The notes beneath the pieces are model-generated. The model was not told the origin of the DNA and made no database searches. It was given only the letters and a program-made list of their open reading frames with translations. 64,000 nt of DNA from Magallana gigas (taxonomy: Eukaryota), in the NCBI RefSeq assembly GCF_963853765.1, contig NC_088857.1, forward strand, positions 34,348,001 through 34,412,000. The letters are read 5' to 3'. Position numbers and translations under genes: made by a program. Positions 2,447 through 37,641 of the stretch are shown piece after piece (position 1 is the stretch's first letter; every line of letters starts with the position of its first letter).

Positions 2447-2983
2447 CTGAAATATTTACACAACACTTCTAAACAAACAGTCTATAACAGTTGCACATAA
2501 AGGATATATTGCTACATTTGTCCCAAACATCCAAAATGATTTCCGTACCAACACTATATTGGACTCATGTAATTGTCTGATAACCATGCAATGGTGAATG
2601 AAACAATCTAAGTGAAACATGTATGCATACTTAGTTGATTTGAAAATTTTACTTTGGTATTTAGTCATTCACCATAAATGTGAACAAAAAGCCCTGGCTT
2701 ACCTATGCTCTGCATAGAAATCTAAATACCGGTACATTTAATTATTTAGGGAAGTAAAATATTACTGTCAGATGCACTCTTCTTATCTAATTTTTTGGTT
2801 GTGAATACTATGATCATCATGCCAGTCTTTGATTTAAATTAATGTAGAAAAATTAACTACCATCAAAGCAGCAATGCTCCAACATTGGTGCATGCAGTGA
2901 TGAGGTTGCACTTCTAAATCATCTTGATCTCTAAACAAAAAAGCAACTGCAGTAATTACATGTAGCTTCAGTACTTTGATTAC

Positions 2984-3095
2984 CTATCGGGGTAAGCTGG
3001 GGCAGAGCTCTGGCTGAGTCCAGGATCTTCTTTCTGTGCTCTGCTGAGGTAATTCCAATGGCTTCAAGGTCACTTTCCTCCATTATCTTTCCTCC
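2984..3095 (-). CDS. ANKS1: ANKS1 exon 17, SAM1 C-terminal half
   Basis: GGKIMEESDLEAIGITSAEHRKKILDSARALP; phase 0/1. Confidence 0.95.
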
Positions 3096-3223
3096 CTGCA
3101 AAAAAAAGCATCGTGCAGCTTTTTAATAATACCTGACTGTGTAAATATACACCTGCATCTATGAATATGGATAAAACATCCATGCTATTAACAGATGCCT
3201 CATTTAAATGACTGAGAACTCAC

Positions 3224-3327
3224 CAAGAAGTCTGTGTGATCGAAGCCATTAGCGACCAGAGTGTTCTCGTAATGTCCCAGGCCGTTTTCCTCCAGCCACT
3301 CCCCGACACTCAAAATCCTCCCAGGGT
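3224..3327 (-). CDS. ANKS1: ANKS1 exon 16, SAM1 N-terminal half
   Basis: PGRILSVGEWLEENGLGHYENTLVANGFDHTDFL; donor gtgagt; phase 1/0. Confidence 0.95.
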
Positions 3328-4594
3328 CTATCAAACAGCAACAGATGTAGATGCATACATACAAAAGTATTGGTACATGAAAATGAATAAAAACATATTA
3401 ATTATCCCTATTACTAGTACTGATTTACAATTAAAAAAAAAAATAAAATACATGCATTTTACATACACATGTAAAATATTTTTTTCCTCAATTTTTAACT
3501 CCCAATATAACTTTTGTTAAATTTCTTGTAAAAAATCTACACATAATTCCCACCCCCTCTCCCTTTTTCTTGTACCTATCATTTTATCCTACATGTACCG
3601 GTACATGTACTCATATCAGATGCATGAATATCTTGACTCATATCCCATCTGTTACAAACATGCACCAAGTGATTTTTATCGACCCCACTATCTCTATACA
3701 TATGACTGAATTGGCTACGATACAACATGTTGTACAGAGAAAAATTGAAACATTAATCATATTATAACAGGGAATACTTTCATATAATCAATGATGAAGA
3801 TCTGCACAGGAATGCAAAGAGTCAAACAAGTCAAGATTTATTTTAAAAAAGCATGCAAGATATATTCAGAATAATTTTCAAATCGGAGAGATTATGGAAT
3901 CAGTTTGAAATCTGCAATTGCAGCATGACTTGGCCTTAGCATTGAAAGAATCAAAGCAGAGAGAGAGAGAGGAAATAGCTGGGAACAATGTGGATTCCTT
4001 TACTTTATCAAATCTTTTTTTTTCAAACCTGACCGCATTCTTCAATTTTTCTATCAAAATATCAAAAATAATCAACACAATCATGATATTGTAAAAATTA
4101 CAACAGAAATCTATTAAGAATAAATGGTGGCTGGAATTCCAAAGATTTTTGGCAGCTGGAGTATTACGGTAAGTTTTTTTTATTATTTTTTTTTTTGGGG
4201 GGGGGGGGGGGGGGTTTCAGGATATCCTCTGCTTCTTAATGTCATTTTGGTTATTTTTTTGTTCCTATCTGATTTGGTAATTGGGGGAGTAGGAAGGGAG
4301 GATTAGGTTGGCAGTGGAAGATGGGGGTGGGGGGGGGGGGGTGGGTGGGGGGATTCAATAACCCCAAACATATTTAAAACTTACTTTTTTTCACTCCTTA
4401 GTTATATGTGCTGTAGCTATGTTTTACTAATTTAGAAATCTTAAAAACTTCTAAACATGAGTGAAGCTGTGATGCTACTTAAAGTGCTTTATGTTTTATA
4501 GACTCTAATCTGAGTGTCGTTCTTATGTCTATGTGTGATAGGATATTGATGACATAACAGGATAAACCAGCTATGAGACATTATGAATACATAC

Positions 4595-4703
4595 ACTGTT
4601 GCAAACTGTCGGCTAACTTTTTCAGAAAGGCGGGTTCCATTTCTCGCATGAACACTGACTCCCTCGCAATTCCACCCCCAAAAGATGCCATAATGTCCTC
4701 AAT
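4595..4703 (-). CDS. ANKS1: ANKS1 exon 15b (IEDIMASFGGGIARESVFMREMEPAFLKKLADSLQQ)
   Basis: Acceptor tctttag, donor gtatgt, phase 0/1. EWAK|IEDIMASFG resembles the vertebrate EWDEIEKIMSSIG motif as recalled. Confidence 0.88.
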
Positions 4704-5453
4704 CTAAAGAACATGCAAGACTACAAGTGCAGAAAGGTCATGCAAATACTGTAAGGAAATAGATATCGTTTCACAGGATATCTGGCGCTTTCAATAAGGA
4801 AAAACAAGTCCTGCCGCTTTTAGTAGAATAAATAGGAAGGAAAAAATATAAAAGAAACCTGAAATCCACAAAAAATCTTGTTAATTCAATGGTTAGTCAG
4901 CTGAGAAATTAGAAACCAGTCTGGGTTTAGAGGAGATTGGGACCTCGTCCAGTTTTTTGTCTTTAAAACTAGTGCCCGTTCCTTAGTCTATACTTCTACT
5001 CTGCAACCTTAGTGTTGTTACCAGTATCTGTTCAGTGTATATATATTCCAATTTATTGTTAATTACATGTAATATGTACTAGCATGTTCAATTTCGATAT
5101 ATATATCCATCATAATGGGATTTTGAATTGATTTTGTTTTAAAAGTTTGAGTGATATTTTGGAAAAAACACTCCATTACTGACGATTTCCTCTTCTGTTC
5201 TAGCAAGCCTAAAATTATCTGCCTTTTTAAGCTATATAGTATCTGCAAGCTCAGAATGTTCCATGTAAAGAGGAATGTATTAGTATGAGAATCAGCAATC
5301 ACAAAAAGAAATTGGTACTGAAATTGGTAATAGATTTCATTCTGTTCATGCATGGCCTAGAATATGGGCAGATTATTGTGTGAAGATGTGAATAATTCTG
5401 AAATTGGTATGGACACACAAGACAATGTGTGCCTTCACAGCATGCTGGTGTAC

Positions 5454-5544
5454 CTCGGTTGAGCATCTGTATTTCGGCCTCAAATGACGGCAGGTCAGTG
5501 TACACACCAATGTCTCCTCCAAAACTAGAGACAATATCCGCAAT
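5454..5544 (-). CDS. ANKS1: ANKS1 exon 15a, paralog of 15b (IADIVSSFGGDIGVYTDLPSFEAEIQMLNR)
   Basis: Acceptor tttgacctttag, donor gtacac, same phases (0/1) and same I.DI..SFGG.I start as 15b. Confidence 0.7.
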
Positions 5545-6065
5545 CTAAAGGTCAAAGGTCAAATTAATTCTAATTTCGCGTTTCCAAAATATAAACATCT
5601 CATAAGAATTTACATTTCATAATACATGTCAAAATATCAAAATGAGGATAAAATATTGCCTCTAAGATAGCTTAAGGTTTCATGTAGTTCTGTAAACCAA
5701 CTTTAAAATATAATATTCCCAATGACAAAGTTTTGCCTTTCCTAGCTATCTGACTTCAATCATATTATCATGTATTTTTGCAGTATATTGCAGTAATTCA
5801 TAATGATTTGAACAGGGGCATTGAGAGTATTTCTTGTACCCTATAACAGTTGGTTAACAGTACAATGTGCCATGTTCCTATCAATACAGACCACTTTTTC
5901 TACCATCACCTGAATATGTACCTTAAACTCTGATAATATTTAAATCAAGGCGATAAAAAAGGACTGAGAAAATCCTGGTTCTATTAGAGGAAGTTTTAAA
6001 GCATATTCATAAGTTTTCACTCTAAATTAAAATGAAGCCAGCTCATTTGACATTATGATGCTTAC

Positions 6066-6319
6066 CTTCGCCCATTCCTCATCATCATCTGGTCCATCTT
6101 CTTTACCATGTAACCTTGACATTCTTGGATCATGAGATGACATTGCAATTGTGGCCATTTTCTTTTCAAAGCTTTCTTCCTTCATGGGATCCAAGGTCAT
6201 TGCCAAGGCGCCAGGAAGAGACTTCCTCTTAGAGGACCAGGAATTTCGATGAGCGACATTGTCTGAAATTTGGGTCACTAAGGTCCTTGGTCCACCAATC
6301 ACAGAGCCCCGATACAGAC
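6066..6319 (-). CDS. ANKS1: ANKS1 exon 14 (GLYRGSVIGG...DDDEEWAK)
   Basis: Acceptor cattgtag, donor gtaagc, phase 1/0; completes the PFA-GLYRGS motif across the 18-kb intron. Confidence 0.9.
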
Positions 6320-8747
6320 CTACAATGACCAAAAAAACCATCACTGCTTCACTGTAGTGTACACATCATACAATAAAATATATAGTATGTACATATGGTT
6401 TATTGATCAGTATATATTCATCGGTGTCACCGACACCTCAATTAATGCACCCTGCTGTGTGAGCTGTACCCTGAAGGGAAATACTTACTTATATTTATCT
6501 AACTTTCTCTAATTAGTCATCCACTCAATTTAGGTATTCTTACTGGTAATTAAATTTGTGTATTAAGAGAAACTCTCGCTCAATAACATATTGCATGATA
6601 CATTTTCAAAAACACAAGAAAAATTATAAATGTAAACATTTGATTCTGCCACTATTTTCAGGCCCCTTTATTTTCCACAAAAGCATTTAAATAAGCATGT
6701 ACATATATATCAGAATAAATTTTGTTGACCCCCCCCCCCCCCCCTTGACGCAAGATCTTGCATAACTACTCTTTGCACAGTATCTTAATTTATTTCCTGC
6801 TAATACATGTACAACAAGCTGAGACTTCCTTCTCTTTTACTTTTTATTTTACCTCTTTCTGTGGGTAAATCAGTAATATCAATGTAAACTTATAAATTGT
6901 ATTACTTTAAACATCAAAATGTCTTGATTAACATTTTATTACTGTACTGTGTTCATTCAATATATATTGCAAAAATAAACATCCAAAATCACTCTCCTTA
7001 TAGGCAAAATCTGATCAAAAGTTCTCCCCGAAATACAGGACTAGATGACTCCTGAAGTGATTGCTAGCATATTGGTTTGATATGAAATTTGAAATACCTG
7101 AAATATCAGTTTATCACTGCCAAAATATTTTTTCTAACACTAATGAAAAGCATGTTCAATCTGTAAAAGCCATTATTCTTCCATCCTCAATTAGCACCTA
7201 CAAATTAGCACTGCTTGAGCCATGGCAGCAGTAAAGTCCCAAGTCAACCATATTTCAATGCCAATATCAAATTCCTTGGAGGAAAGATGCATTCAGATAC
7301 AAAACATAGCCAAAGGTGAATCAATGCACAATGCTCTGCTGCTGATGATAATGGTTTGATGATGATGATGAAGATGACTGTTACATCACTAAGGATTTTA
7401 AACTTAAGGAACCCTGCAATGCTGCATTCATTCACGTGTGTGTGAGCATTTTTCTAAAAACCCTTGTTATTGATCATAGTATGCTTGAAGGCAAATGAGT
7501 AACTATATGAAGATGTGTCCTGAGTCTCCATACACGCATCATTTGTACATTATGCAAAGTGCTTTTAAATTTACCAATACATGAAATTTTTTGGTTGGTT
7601 CTACAATTCGTAAACAAGATATCAAAACCATTTTTCCTAAACCTGCAGCAAAAAACAAACAGCAAATCTTCAGGAAACTTAAAAAAAAAAAAGCTGTAAA
7701 AACAGCAGTAAATGAGATGTCAAAGTTCTGATGTTAACAACTGTTTTTTTCTCACAAATTGGCCAAGAATTCATGTTTCCTTCTTCTTTTTCACTTCATT
7801 ACCCAAGTTCATTGCTTGTGGGTGCCCGCAGAACATCTGACTAATGATCTGTATCGAGTATACCTCACTGTAAACAAGACAAGCCAGATGCTGGCCCATC
7901 TTCTGTCTGACTAACTGTACAACAGTCAACAAATTGTGCAACAAGTAAACATTGACAGGAAATGCTGTCATCAATTACCCGGTACATTGAACTATTGCTG
8001 CAATTAAAATTCCCTGTTTCAATGAGCTAGGTTTTAAAAAAGTGCTGTTTATTAAATACCCGGGTAATTAATAATATTATCTGAATTGAATTGCATGAAA
8101 ACATTATGAGTTATGACACTAACTTAAGTTGAGCAAAAATCCCTTTCAATATGACCATGAAACTGCTGCCAACATTATGAATCTTCAAACAAGTTACATG
8201 ATCACAGAAGATCTAAGCTTGACCACTAGTACTAAATATACTCTCATCATGAACAGGTCAGGACCTATACATCTTACATCACTGATAAGATCTACCTGTT
8301 TCTAACTACTTAATGAGCTACACTCTTCATGACTTATTGCAACTTAATCCATGCCTTGAATCAAACCAATGAAAAAAAATCATTTGTACTGGTAATCCAT
8401 GTACTCAGGTAATGGTTGATAACCATAATAAACCAGATTTGAATTTTAGAGTTTCAATTTCATCATGACGTTAATGTACCTGTAATGAAACCTAATGATG
8501 ATGACTTAATAAGATGCCCCTTGATTGAGTTATTAAGATCCAAAGGAAATAAATAGAAGTTCCATTGATGACATAAAATATACTAACTCAATACTACACA
8601 AAATGTGCAATAACTTTTTCAAAAGCGTGCCAATATGTTGAACATTTAATAAAAATTTTAAACCTTCTGATTACAGTGGATTGTTGCAGAAAGAATTCCT
8701 GAACCATGAATGTTCAAGACTCAATCTGAAATATCTAAAAATACAAA

Positions 8748-35046: not shown

Positions 35047-35590
35047 CTATTTAGCAACAAAAGAAATTTTATAATCTTCTGAATCTGCTGAATGCAACTA
35101 AATACTAGTCATATTTGTATAATACTTTAAACAAACTTTTAATTATACAATAGTACACCAAAACTATGACATAGCACAACACTGATATAGTGAAATTCAA
35201 GCTGTCAAACTTTTTACAATAGTATAAAGCATTGATATGGTGAATTTCATGCGGTCAGAAGTTTGTACTCTGTTGTGATTTATCTTATATGTATTGATTT
35301 TCAATACAATGAATTTACTGTATTTACTTTTTTATATACACCTGCTGGTAATTAACATCAAATAATTATTTTTTGTCCATTCACATGATTTTTTTAACAG
35401 TTAAAAAATTTCATTAGAAATAGAATGCTAATTTAAGTTTTATTAACCTAGAAAGTAAACATTCAAATATTTTACACAACATCTTTGAAACACAGCGAGT
35501 TTTATATTGTTATGAGAATTTATAGCAATATGATTAATTTTTTTCAAATTCAGTATCATTCTTTAGTTTTGATGTAAAATTAATACCAAC

Positions 35591-36369: not shown

Positions 36370-37393
36370 CTACAGTCAGAAAGACATGGAGTATTATACT
36401 TTATGATTAAGTAAAATATTTTACACATGCTATGATTATTTTGCTCGATTTAAAAAAAGAAAGTGTATTTTGAATTATAAACGGCTTTCTTCGATCAACG
36501 TTCTGATTTTGTGCAATAATTATATTAAATCCACAAAAATTGGTTCTCAAAGATTCACGATAAAATCACAGTATGCTGCGTCATGCAAAAATTTAATTAT
36601 GTAAGCTTGCTGGCAAGAAACAATTGCTGTTAAATATGCATATACAAGATGTCTGTCGCCATTTCAACAGATAATCATCTTCATTTGATAATCATAAATT
36701 CAAATATCACACAAAAAATATAACTATAGGTTCTGAGGGCATATCGTAAGAGGAGCCATAATAACATCAAAAATACAGATGCATTGAATGTGTTTGTACA
36801 TTTAGACAGACTAACCACTGTAAGGGGAAGTTTATTTTCATCACAAGGATATCATTACAGCTGGGCAATTTAGATTTAAACAATAGGCAGCTTCAGACCT
36901 ATATATGTATACAAGTATGATTAGACCTTCATAACAATGCATCCGAGGTCAAAATGTTATGGTGTGTTATTTGTTTCCAATAATTATAACACCTGCACAC
37001 AATGTGGTCTTCGGGAAACTTGCTACATATCACAAGAACATGTGGTGGACGGATTAAAATAACTTTGGACTGATCAAGAATAGAAATGAAAAAGCTTTAA
37101 ATCATACTAAAATAAAAATCAAATATAATAATGTTCTTCAATGTTCAAAAACACCACTTTGTCCCATTTTCTATATTACATATTTTGATGATCATAAATC
37201 TCTATATAAATGTTTCACTCAAATTTCTCTTGAAAATTTCAACATAAATTGTTTCAAAACATTTTCAATTTAGTTACATGTACATAAATCTATCAATTTT
37301 GTTGATTGCTGAAAATTGTTTAATTGTAAGAAAGACCTAAAATAAAGCTACATTTCTCAGGTAGATTAATTAATACCCCGGTACATGTATTTT

Positions 37394-37641
37394 ACCTGTA
37401 TGTTGACTTCGATTTGAGAGTGAGGACTTGTGAGGAAAAATAACCTGTATGTTGACCTGGATTTGAGAGTGAGGACTTGTGAGGAGAAATTACCTGTATG
37501 TTGACCTGGAATTGAGAGTGAGGACTTGTGAGGAGAAATTACCTGTATGTTTTTGACCTGGATTTGAGAGTGAGGACTTGTGAGGAGAAATTACCTGTAT
37601 GTTGACCTGGATTTGAGAGTGAGGACTTGTGAGGAGAATCC
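37394..37641. repeat. Minisatellite, 5 copies of a 49-bp unit (one 52 bp), overlapping the 3' end and donor of ANKS1 exon 3
   Basis: Unit acctgtatgttgacctggatttgagagtgaggacttgtgaggagaaatt starts at 37394, 37443, 37492, 37541 and 37593. Confidence 0.95.

What the first reader, a model, noticed from the sequence alone, without database searches (positions are those of the whole stretch)
4595..5544. Duplicated, probably mutually exclusive exon pair in ANKS1 immediately before SAM1
Seen: two exons with the same entry and exit phases (0/1) and homologous starts, 5454-5544 IADIVSSFGGDIGVYTDLPSFEAEIQMLNR and 4595-4703 IEDIMASFGGGIARESVFMREMEPAFLKKLADSLQQ. Each joins exon 14 (..EEWAK) to exon 16 in frame, and joining both directly shifts the frame. 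The start of both exons continues the EEWAK motif, which resembles vertebrate EWDEIEKIMSSIG. Inference: exon duplication created a switchable module next to the SAM tandem. I know of no such arrangement described for ANKS1. Alternative model: a weak 65-nt phase 1/0 exon at 4917-4981 (GTGTSFKDKKLDEVPISSKPRL) could link 15a to 15b in tandem.
Basis: partly seen in the sequence, partly recalled or inferred. Interest (0 to 1): 0.7.

Follow-up and report, generated by a model that had tools for sequence, protein, structure and literature searches.

The report
Ancient mutually exclusive ANKS1 exon pair
Two related exons just before the first SAM domain of an oyster ANKS1 scaffold gene are spliced in one at a time, and the same pair, with a conserved Rbfox-type splicing motif beside it, is present in molluscs, a brachiopod and nemerteans, so it is an old regulated switch and not a recent oyster duplication.

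Summary
On the minus strand, exon A (5544-5454, 91 nt) and exon B (4703-4595, 109 nt) both enter in phase 0 and leave in phase 1. RNA-seq junction reads from four runs of two studies join exon 14 to A (47 reads), A to exon 16 (54), exon 14 to B (36) and B to exon 16 (28). No A-B joint, linker-exon joint or 14-16 skip is among the 15 best-supported joints.

Including both exons gives an immediate stop codon.

The pair is not oyster-specific. Alternative RefSeq isoforms of one gene carry A or B in 14 species: bivalves, gastropods, a chiton, a nemertean and a brachiopod. Eight genomic loci keep the order 14-A-B-16, with every exon 1 mod 3 in length. B is the ancestral bilaterian form; A forms a single clade (100/100 support).

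Both exons are under strong purifying selection (dN/dS at most 0.10).

UGCAUG lies within 100 nt upstream of B in 5 of 6 independent lineages and is the top-ranked hexamer there. I infer Rbfox-type control that favours A and represses B.

The kind of system is known and relatives' annotations already hold both forms. I found no paper describing it. The scan's only other note on this feature is this same stretch.

The parts
6066..6325 (-). Exon 14 (3' end ..DDDEEWAK, leaves in phase 0). The upper boundary is 6319 or 6325, because six bases fit either side of the joint.
   Evidence: Joints 4703->6066 and 5544->6066 and the loose end at 6325. Sequence and translation. 82-85% identical to the exon in O. 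edulis and C. virginica.
5454..5544 (-). This is the lophotrochozoan-specific variant.
   Evidence: Joints 5544->6066 (47 reads) and 3327->5454 (54 reads). dN/dS 0-0.04 among three oyster genera. Orthologous exons in 7 other loci.
5245..5453 (-). Conserved intron block downstream of exon A. It holds GCAUG at 5445-5441 (+9) and UGCAUG at 5352-5347 (+102).
   Evidence: Aligns at about 82% with C. virginica and O. edulis, while the rest of the intron does not align. Motif positions are conserved in all three oysters.
4917..4981 (-). It is not an exon.
   Evidence: No joint among the listed ones and depth equal to the surrounding intron. Purine-rich acceptor and weak donor. Poorly conserved, with indels, in the three-oyster alignment.
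4704..4928 (-). Conserved intron block upstream of exon B. 44 consecutive invariant bases (4751-4708) carry two UGCAUG motifs, at 4744-4739 (-41) and 4717-4712 (-14).
   Evidence: Alignment A1. 56% of four-fold degenerate sites vary in the same three species, so 44 invariant neutral bases would be about 1e-16 likely (my calculation from that rate). UGCAUG is the top-ranked hexamer upstream of B across lineages.
4595..4703 (-). This is the ancestral bilaterian variant with the invariant R-E-S motif.
   Evidence: Joints 4703->6066 (36 reads) and 3327->4595 (28 reads). dN/dS 0.015-0.10. B-type segment found in echinoderms, hemichordates, chelicerates and an annelid.
3223..3327 (-). Exon 16, the first half of SAM1, entered in phase 1 from either A or B.
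   Evidence: Joints at 3327 and 3223. Pfam SAM_1 hit. Solved ANKS1 SAM structures begin here.
2985..3094 (-). Exon 17, the second half of SAM1.
   Evidence: Joint 3094->3223 (95 reads). The loose end at 2984 continues into the SAM2 exon.

Best explanation
**What it is.** This is a true pair of mutually exclusive exons in the single ANKS1 orthologue of an oyster (ankyrin repeats, two SAM domains, PTB domain).

**What is shown.**
- Each mRNA takes exon A or exon B between exon 14 and the SAM1 exon.
- Both exons are 1 mod 3 in length, so taking both gives an immediate stop and taking neither shifts the frame.
- The two exons are homologous over their whole length.
- B is the ancestral bilaterian exon. 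A arose once by tandem duplication before molluscs, brachiopods and nemerteans diverged. Order, phases and length class have been kept since.
- Both exons and about 200 nt of flanking intron on the inner side of each are under strong purifying selection.

**What is inferred, probability about 0.55.** The choice is regulated by an Rbfox-family protein.
- UGCAUG sits within 100 nt upstream of B in five of six independent lineages and downstream of A in the A-B intron.
- By the known position rule this represses B and favours A. The geometry is the same as FGFR2 IIIb/IIIc.
- Frame incompatibility plus nonsense-mediated decay would remove transcripts that take both exons or neither.

**What is inferred, weaker.** At protein level the switch replaces the second helix of a helix-loop-helix that directly precedes SAM1. 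That helix is 12 residues in A and 18 in B, and B carries the invariant RES-hydrophobic-aromatic motif. I infer that this changes a partner contact or an intramolecular contact of the SAM tandem and leaves the rest of the scaffold unchanged.
For: **RNA.**
- Junction reads, X20/X21/X22/X23: 14-A 16/23/5/3, A-16 16/28/7/3, 14-B 8/12/2/14, B-16 14/12/2/0.
- All have GT..AG ends on the gene strand, with up to 75 nt on the shorter side of the joint.

**Frames.** A+B gives a stop; skipping both shifts the frame.

**Homology.** Local score is far above shuffles. Profile-profile comparison of 18 A exons with 23 B exons gives probability 95% and E 2e-8 over 34 columns.

**Conservation of the pair.**
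- A and B occur as alternative isoforms of one gene in 14 species.
- Seven other loci besides the window (O. edulis, C. virginica, Pinctada, Liolophura, Lineus, Lingula, Pomacea) have the order 14-A-B-16 and exon lengths 1 mod 3.
- A and B are separated by a 100/100 branch in the tree.
- Only B-type is seen in the echinoderm, hemichordate, chelicerate and annelid models.

**Selection.**
- dN/dS is 0-0.04 for A and 0.015-0.10 for B.
- Conserved intron blocks flank the exons, including 44 invariant bases.

**Rbfox motif.**
- TGCATG is the single most shared of all hexamers in the 100 nt upstream of B, present in 4 of 5 and then 5 of 6 lineages.
- A-B introns hold 14 copies against 3.4 expected in five lineages, Poisson P 1.4e-5.
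- The 14-A introns of those same five lineages hold none.
- The position rule and the FGFR2, egl-15 and alpha-actinin precedents are in PMC2777236.

**Protein.**
- AlphaFold2 models show helix 10-23, then helix 34-45 in A or 35-52 in B, before a confident SAM tandem.
- No solved ANKS1 structure covers this segment.
Against: - No direct evidence that any Rbfox protein binds or regulates here. Lineus has no (U)GCAUG within 120 nt of B.
- The motif downstream of A lies within 150 nt only in oysters.
- I could not confirm an Rbfox gene in this genome with the tool tried. PF12414 matched nothing anywhere, controls included.
- Tissues of the runs are unknown.
- X23 gives contradictory ratios at the two junctions: 14-B 14 reads but B-16 0 reads.
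- 18 weaker joints were not displayed, so low-level A-B inclusion, roughly at most 10 reads in total, is not excluded.
- The alternative segment is modelled at pLDDT 50-68 only, so nothing about docking on SAM1 is shown.
- Annelid status of exon A is untested. Only the B form is seen in Owenia, and no genomic DNA was obtainable for it.
Confidence: 0.8

Rival explanations
1. The pair is mutually exclusive only because of frame incompatibility and nonsense-mediated decay. The choice is stochastic or set by splice-site strength, with no dedicated regulator. On this view the UGCAUG motifs are conserved for another reason.
For: - Both exons are 1 mod 3 in all eight loci, which alone enforces exclusivity at the level of stable mRNA.
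- Both forms coexist at comparable levels in the three poly(A) runs.
Against: - About 200 nt of intron beside each exon, including 44 invariant bases, is conserved among oyster genera whose four-fold sites are 56% variable. That is typical of regulated exons.
- UGCAUG is the top-ranked hexamer upstream of B across phyla.
- The A:B ratio at the upstream junction differs between libraries: 44:22 against 3:14, Fisher P 6e-4.
Confidence: 0.25
2. Choice is made by competing RNA secondary structures, a docking site and selector sequences as in Dscam1 or 14-3-3 xi. The conserved intron blocks downstream of A and upstream of B would pair with each other.
For: RNAalifold on three oysters proposes long-range helices between the start of exon A or the block downstream of A and the block upstream of B: columns 3-14/851-863, 171-177/823-829 and 183-188/813-818.
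Against: - These helices are short and rich in G-U pairs. They have no compensatory changes, and 4 of 13 pairs are broken in O. edulis.
- The covariation term is +0.25 kcal/mol, so it adds no support.
- Inverted repeats in the interval are at chance level.
Confidence: 0.1
3. A and B are included in tandem through a short linker exon at 4917-4981, or by reading past the donor of A as in the Pinctada gene model.
For: - A + linker + B is in frame.
- One deposited Pinctada imbricata model contains A, four extra residues and B in series.
Against: - No joint touches 4917 or 4981, and there is no A-B joint among the listed ones. Depth over the linker equals the intron background.
- Its splice sites are weak and it is not conserved.
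- The Pinctada model simply reads 12 nt past a canonical GAG|gtaac donor.
- None of the RefSeq isoforms examined in 14 species holds both exons.
Confidence: 0.02
4. One of the two exons is a decaying duplicate that is spliced in only as noise.
For: Only the first 12 residues are obviously alike within the oyster.
Against: - Both exons have tens of junction reads on both sides.
- dN/dS is at most 0.10 for both.
- Both are conserved across phyla.
Confidence: 0.01

Closest known systems
FGFR2 exons IIIb/IIIc (vertebrates), egl-15 exons 5A/5B (C. elegans) and alpha-actinin NM/SM exons, all Fox-1/Rbfox-regulated mutually exclusive pairs
   Same: Two adjacent homologous exons are used one at a time. 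UGCAUG lies in the intron flank upstream of the exon to be repressed. In FGFR2 the upstream exon is favoured and the downstream exon repressed through UGCAUG upstream of the latter, which is the geometry seen here (PMC2777236).
   Different: Regulation by Rbfox is experimentally shown for those genes and only inferred from motif position and conservation here. The gene, the protein region (a helix before a SAM domain, not a ligand-binding Ig half-domain) and the taxa differ.
Vertebrate ANKS1B (AIDA-1) and ANKS1A (Odin) alternative splicing
   Same: Same gene family and domain order. Vertebrate proteins have a single related pre-SAM1 segment, EW-E-I-[DE]-K-I-M-S-S-I-G. ANKS1B is known to be alternatively spliced, for example cassette exon 5 in mouse (PMC10834251).
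   Different: The described vertebrate events are cassette exons elsewhere in the gene. I found no report of a mutually exclusive pair before SAM1. Vertebrate, echinoderm, hemichordate and arthropod models seen here show one form only.
Other mutually exclusive pairs conserved in molluscs and other lophotrochozoans, such as COQ-2 exons 6a/6e and muscle myosin heavy chain clusters
   Same: These are mutually exclusive homologous exons conserved over large phylogenetic distances that include molluscs (titles and abstracts of PMC7434440 and PMC3912159).
   Different: They are different genes with different functions. I read only the listing of these papers, not their text.
Dscam1 / 14-3-3 xi type clusters controlled by docking site and selector RNA pairing
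   Same: Tandem homologous exons chosen one at a time, with conserved intronic sequence.
   Different: No covariation-supported pairing between conserved intron blocks was found here. The cluster has only two members; Lingula has a third short alternative exon at the same position.

Membership tests
Mutually exclusive exon pair | Adjacent exons, each spliced to the same upstream and downstream exons | tested here: met
   Joints 14-A, A-16, 14-B and B-16 are seen in RNA-seq raw reads, except that B-16 had no reads in X23.
Mutually exclusive exon pair | The two exons are not found together, nor both absent, in mature mRNA | tested here: met
   No A-B joint and no 14-16 joint is among the 15 best-supported joints, whose weakest rows have about 10 reads. 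No RefSeq isoform with both exons was seen in 14 species. Low-level events are not excluded, because 18 weaker joints were not displayed.
Mutually exclusive exon pair | Same entry and exit phase, with frame lost on double inclusion or double skipping | tested here: met
   91 and 109 nt, both phase 0/1. A+B gives an immediate stop and skipping both shifts the frame. All A and B exons are 1 mod 3 in eight loci.
Mutually exclusive exon pair | Exons homologous, having arisen by tandem duplication | tested here: met
   Shuffle test, top direct repeat in the interval, hhalign probability 95% and E 2e-8.
ANKS1 (ankyrin repeat and SAM domain-containing protein 1) | N-terminal ankyrin repeats, tandem SAM domains, C-terminal PTB/PID domain | tested here: met
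   Window exons hit SAM_1 and SAM_2. The O. edulis orthologue, which differs from the window's exon A at 1 of 30 residues and from exon B at 1 of 36, has Ank, SAM_1, SAM_2 and PID. Best PDB match is the AIDA-1 SAM tandem 2KIV, E 2e-37. The ankyrin and PTB exons of the window itself were not modelled one by one.
Rbfox/Fox-1-regulated alternative exon | Conserved (U)GCAUG in the proximal intron flank of the regulated exon | tested here: met
   UGCAUG lies within 100 nt upstream of B in 5 of 6 independent lineages and is the top-ranked of all hexamers. Two copies lie inside 44 invariant bases in oysters.
Rbfox/Fox-1-regulated alternative exon | Binding by an Rbfox protein and a change of exon choice when the protein or the motif is removed | not testable with these tools
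   This needs CLIP, a minigene or a knockdown. The Pfam Fox-1_C search of the genome was uninformative, because nothing matched in the controls either.
RNA-structure (docking/selector) controlled cluster | Conserved complementary intronic elements with covariation | tested here: inconclusive
   Predicted long-range helices have no compensatory changes, several pairs are broken in O. edulis, and only three sequences were available.
Steric-hindrance or U2/U12-incompatibility type of exclusivity | Intron between the exons too short for a spliceosome, or one U12-type and one U2-type intron | tested here: not met
   The A-B intron is 750 nt here and 623-2597 nt elsewhere. All four introns have GT-AG ends and none has a U12-like donor.

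The most novel reading that the evidence does not exclude
The A/B pair is a switch more than 500 million years old, specific to lophotrochozoans and driven by Rbfox. It gives the single ANKS1 gene of these animals two tissue-specific versions (for example neuron or muscle against other tissues) of a short helix that controls what the first SAM domain can bind. If so, the never-studied pre-SAM1 segment, conserved from echinoderms to arthropods as the RES-hydrophobic-aromatic helix and present in vertebrate AIDA-1 and Odin, would be a functional regulatory element of the whole family.
Probability: 0.35. Interest if true: 0.6.

Novelty: new member of a known kind. Interest (0 to 1): 0.45.

Why it matters
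- ANKS1 proteins (AIDA-1, Odin) are synaptic and receptor-tyrosine-kinase scaffolds. Their SAM tandem has been solved, but none of the solved structures includes the segment just before SAM1.
- An exon pair kept mutually exclusive across at least three phyla, with dN/dS at most 0.1 and intron flanks more conserved than synonymous sites, says that this segment matters. It also says that two versions of it are needed in the same animal.
- It gives a clean, testable case of deep conservation of a splicing switch and its likely regulator motif outside vertebrates, insects and nematodes.
- Practically, it flags gene models that fuse both exons, such as the Pinctada model, as artefacts.

Tried and rejected
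- **Linker exon 4917-4981.** Rejected: no joints, background depth, weak sites, not conserved.
- **Third copy of the exon.** None found between exons 14 and 16.
- **RNA pairing between conserved intron blocks.** Inverted-repeat scan and RNAalifold gave only weak helices without covariation.
- **Rbfox gene in this genome.** The Pfam PF12414 search found nothing, and nothing in the control genomes either, so it is uninformative.
- **Annelids.**
  - The Owenia locus was too long to fetch.
  - A protein search seeded with the Owenia segment returned only 5 hits and no further annelid, so whether annelids have exon A is open.
- **Other loci.** Haliotis, Pecten and Mya were also too long to fetch. 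P0162 was not on record because only the longest isoform is indexed.
- **AlphaFold2 of A+SAM tandem and B+SAM tandem.** The alternative segment came out helical but at pLDDT 50-68, so no claim about docking is made.
- **Literature.**
  - Searches for ANKS1 with mutually exclusive exons or with Rbfox found only unrelated mentions.
  - The one hit I opened (PMC10834251) describes a cassette exon in mouse Anks1b.
- **Putative alternative 3' exon at about 3801.** The acceptor is not conserved in C. virginica and no joint was shown, so it is left unexplained.

Full report
**1. The observation**

The gene runs on the minus strand.
- Exon A is 5544-5454 (91 nt). Exon B is 4703-4595 (109 nt). Both follow an AG and precede a GT.
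- Exon 14 ends at 6066 with ..EEWAK in phase 0 and a strong donor.
- Exon 16, the start of SAM1, begins at 3327 in phase 1.
- Joining 14-A-16 or 14-B-16 keeps the frame. A+B gives a stop directly after A. Skipping both shifts the frame.

The two peptides share I-x-D-I-x-x-S-F-G-G-x-I.
- The local score is 40 against 17.1 +/- 3.6 for shuffles, and 0 of 5000 shuffles reach it.
- The best direct repeat in the whole 3-kb interval is the 43 nt spanning the acceptor and exon start of A and B.
- There is no third copy in the interval.

**2. RNA evidence**

The run search identified the organism as an oyster. I laid raw reads of three poly(A) RNA-seq runs and one random-primed single-cell run, from two studies, on 2900-6400.

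| Joint | X20 | X21 | X22 | X23 |
|---|---|---|---|---|
| 14-A | 16 | 23 | 5 | 3 |
| A-16 | 16 | 28 | 7 | 3 |
| 14-B | 8 | 12 | 2 | 14 |
| B-16 | 14 | 12 | 2 | 0 |
| 16-17 (control) | 18 | 49 | 15 | 13 |

- All joints have GT..AG ends on the gene strand and fall exactly on the predicted boundaries.
- No A-B joint, no joint at 4917 or 4981 and no 14-16 joint is among the 15 joints shown.
- 18 weaker joints were not displayed. The weakest displayed rows have about 10 reads.
- Depth over the proposed linker exon equals that of the surrounding intron.
- The upstream-junction ratio differs between the poly(A) runs (44 A: 22 B) and the single-cell run (3: 14), Fisher P 6e-4. In that run the B-16 junction has no reads, so I treat this only as a hint of regulated use.

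**3. Gene identity**

- The SAM exons hit Pfam SAM_1 and SAM_2.
- The Ostrea edulis orthologue, which differs from the window's exon A at 1 of 30 residues and from exon B at 1 of 36, has Ank repeats, two SAM domains and PID.
- The closest solved structure is the AIDA-1 (ANKS1B) SAM tandem, E 2e-37.

**4. The pair is old**

A profile-free search with the SAM2 exon, followed by cluster look-ups, gave full-length relatives.

Two kinds of pre-SAM1 segment exist.
- A-type: I-A-D-I-V-S-S-[YF]-G-G...
- B-type: ...S-F-G-x-G-I-A-R-E-S-V-F...

They occur as alternative RefSeq isoforms of one gene in 14 species:
- Bivalves: Ostrea edulis, Crassostrea virginica, Pecten maximus, Argopecten irradians, Mizuhopecten yessoensis, Mytilus trossulus, Mya arenaria, Dreissena polymorpha.
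- Gastropods: Pomacea canaliculata, Physella acuta, Haliotis rubra.
- Chiton: Liolophura sinensis.
- Nemertean: Lineus longissimus.
- Brachiopod: Lingula anatina.

No isoform examined holds both exons.

The echinoderm, hemichordate, chelicerate and Owenia (annelid) models show B-type only. Vertebrates have one diverged form.

I fetched seven orthologous loci. In all of them, as in the window, the order is exon 14, A, B, exon 16, and every A and B exon is 1 mod 3.

| Species | A (nt) | B (nt) |
|---|---|---|
| Window oyster, C. virginica and O. edulis | 91 | 109 |
| Pinctada | 91 | 97 |
| Liolophura | 100 | 94 |
| Lineus | 103 | 94 |
| Lingula | 109 | 94 |
| Pomacea | 97 | 94 |

- Lingula has a further 34-nt alternative exon upstream of A.
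- Profiles of 18 A exons and 23 B exons align over 34 columns, probability 95%, E 2e-8.
- In a maximum-likelihood tree all A exons lie on one side of a 100/100 branch. All B exons, including those of deuterostomes and arthropods, lie on the other side.
- So there was one duplication, before molluscs, brachiopods and nemerteans diverged, and B kept the ancestral sequence.

**5. Selection**

- Among the three oyster genera, dN/dS is 0-0.04 for A and 0.015-0.10 for B.
- dS in A (0.36-0.44) is well below that of exon 16 (1.5 and above).
- Only parts of the introns align between genera:
  - About 200 nt downstream of A (5453-5245) aligns.
  - About 200 nt upstream of B (4928-4704) aligns.
  - Intron 14-A (apart from about 25-33 nt at the acceptor of A) and intron B-16 in O. 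edulis do not align.
  - C. virginica shares only a few short blocks at 3602-3891 in intron B-16.
- The 44 bases at 4751-4708 are invariant in all three genera. Four-fold degenerate sites in the same species are 56% variable.

**6. How the exclusivity and the choice are probably achieved**

- Steric hindrance and U2/U12 incompatibility are excluded. The A-B intron is 623-2597 nt and all ends are GT-AG.
- Frame incompatibility is universal, so nonsense-mediated decay of double-inclusion and double-skipping products is the likely safety net. This is inferred, not shown.
- RNA pairing between the conserved blocks is not supported by covariation.

The conserved blocks carry Rbfox-type motifs.
- In oysters, UGCAUG lies at -41 and -14 from exon B, inside the invariant stretch. 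GCAUG lies at +9 and UGCAUG at about +102 from exon A.
- Across six independent lineages, UGCAUG lies within 100 nt upstream of B in five: oysters, Pinctada -71 and -22, chiton -98, Lingula -50, Pomacea -58. Lineus is the exception.
- An unbiased count of all hexamers in that 100-nt window ranks TGCATG first and alone.
- A-B introns of five lineages hold 14 copies against 3.4 expected from dinucleotide shuffles, P 1.4e-5. Their 14-A introns hold none.

By the established position rule, Fox-1/Rbfox bound in the upstream flank represses an exon and bound downstream activates it. The FGFR2 IIIb/IIIc switch uses exactly this arrangement (PMC2777236). I therefore infer that Rbfox favours A and represses B, with probability about 0.55. 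Binding and effect are untested.

**7. Protein consequence**

- AlphaFold2 models of the O. edulis A and B forms, built with orthologue alignments, give a confident SAM tandem (pLDDT above 90).
- Before it they place a helix spanning the exon 14/15 junction, a loop and a second helix. The second helix is 12 residues in A and 18 in B. All of this is at pLDDT 50-68.
- The hits to solved ANKS1A and ANKS1B SAM structures begin at query residue 55 or later, which is the first residues of exon 16, so the segment has never been seen experimentally.
- B carries invariant R-E-S and a downstream F across bilaterians. A keeps only the N-terminal motif and an acidic, hydrophobic C-terminal helix.
- That the switch changes a contact of the SAM tandem is inference.

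**8. Novelty**

- Mutually exclusive exons, and Rbfox control of them, are a known kind of system.
- Both isoforms are already modelled in RefSeq for two other oysters and twelve further species.
- Full-text searches found no description of such a pair in ANKS1.
- New here:
  - direct junction evidence in this oyster;
  - a single origin of exon A and retention across three phyla;
  - the cross-phylum UGCAUG signal.
- The scan's only other note on this feature is this same stretch.

**9. Limits**

- Tissues of the runs are coded and unknown.
- Weak joints were not displayed.
- Annelids and other spiralian phyla could not be tested at the genome level.
- The run X23 discrepancy and the transcribed single-copy segment at 3485-3835 remain unexplained.

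Noticed in passing
window 3485-3835 (minus strand), in the intron between exon B and exon 16: This single-copy segment has same-strand RNA depth of up to 36 in the single-cell run X23, above exon 16, and 5-22 in the poly(A) runs. It is partly conserved in C. virginica, including another UGCAUG near 3855. A possible acceptor cag|A at 3801 would give a stop after four codons, producing a truncated isoform without the SAM and PTB domains. That acceptor is not conserved and no joint was displayed.
   Followed up: partly
window 4595-4703 and 3327, run X23: In the single-cell library, 14 reads join exon 14 to B but none joins B to exon 16, while exon 14 depth is three to four times that of exons 16-17. 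This suggests that many transcripts in that library end or go elsewhere after exon 15.
   Followed up: no
window 4319-4356: A C-rich homopolymer-like tract on the gene strand collects reads on both strands, many 'goes back' joints and poly-G loose ends in all four runs. These look like low-complexity mapping artefacts, not biology.
   Followed up: no
window 3368-3484: Opposite-strand reads in X23 (depth 17.7) end at 3448-3450 with loose poly(A) next to a genomic A-rich run at 3433-3448. This is probably internal priming, or a short antisense transcript.
   Followed up: no
L004 (Pinctada imbricata) 37112-37214: The deposited model KAK3101537.1 reads 12 nt past the canonical donor of exon A, adding G-N-F-L, so as to keep frame and include exon B as well. 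This is an annotation artefact that fuses two mutually exclusive exons.
   Followed up: yes
L002 (Lingula) 35307-35340; Liolophura isoform X4; Tubulanus isoform X7: Further alternative exons occupy the same slot in some lineages. Lingula isoform X5 uses a 34-nt exon upstream of A, also 1 mod 3. The chiton and a palaeonemertean each have a divergent third variant.
   Followed up: partly
L001, L003, L006, L007 position 1-124, and the unfetched Pecten and Mya loci: A YhhN-family gene lies head-to-head just upstream of ANKS1 in O. edulis, C. virginica, Pecten, Mya, the chiton Liolophura and the snail Pomacea. This is microsynteny conserved across mollusc classes.
   Followed up: no
window 5454-5544: Synonymous divergence in exon A among oyster genera (dS 0.36-0.44) is several times lower than in exon 16 (1.5 and above). 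This suggests constraint on the RNA sequence of the alternative exon itself.
   Followed up: partly
window 37394-37641: Another first-stage note on this window reports a minisatellite that repeats an ANKS1 exon end and its 5' splice site. I did not examine it.
   Followed up: no
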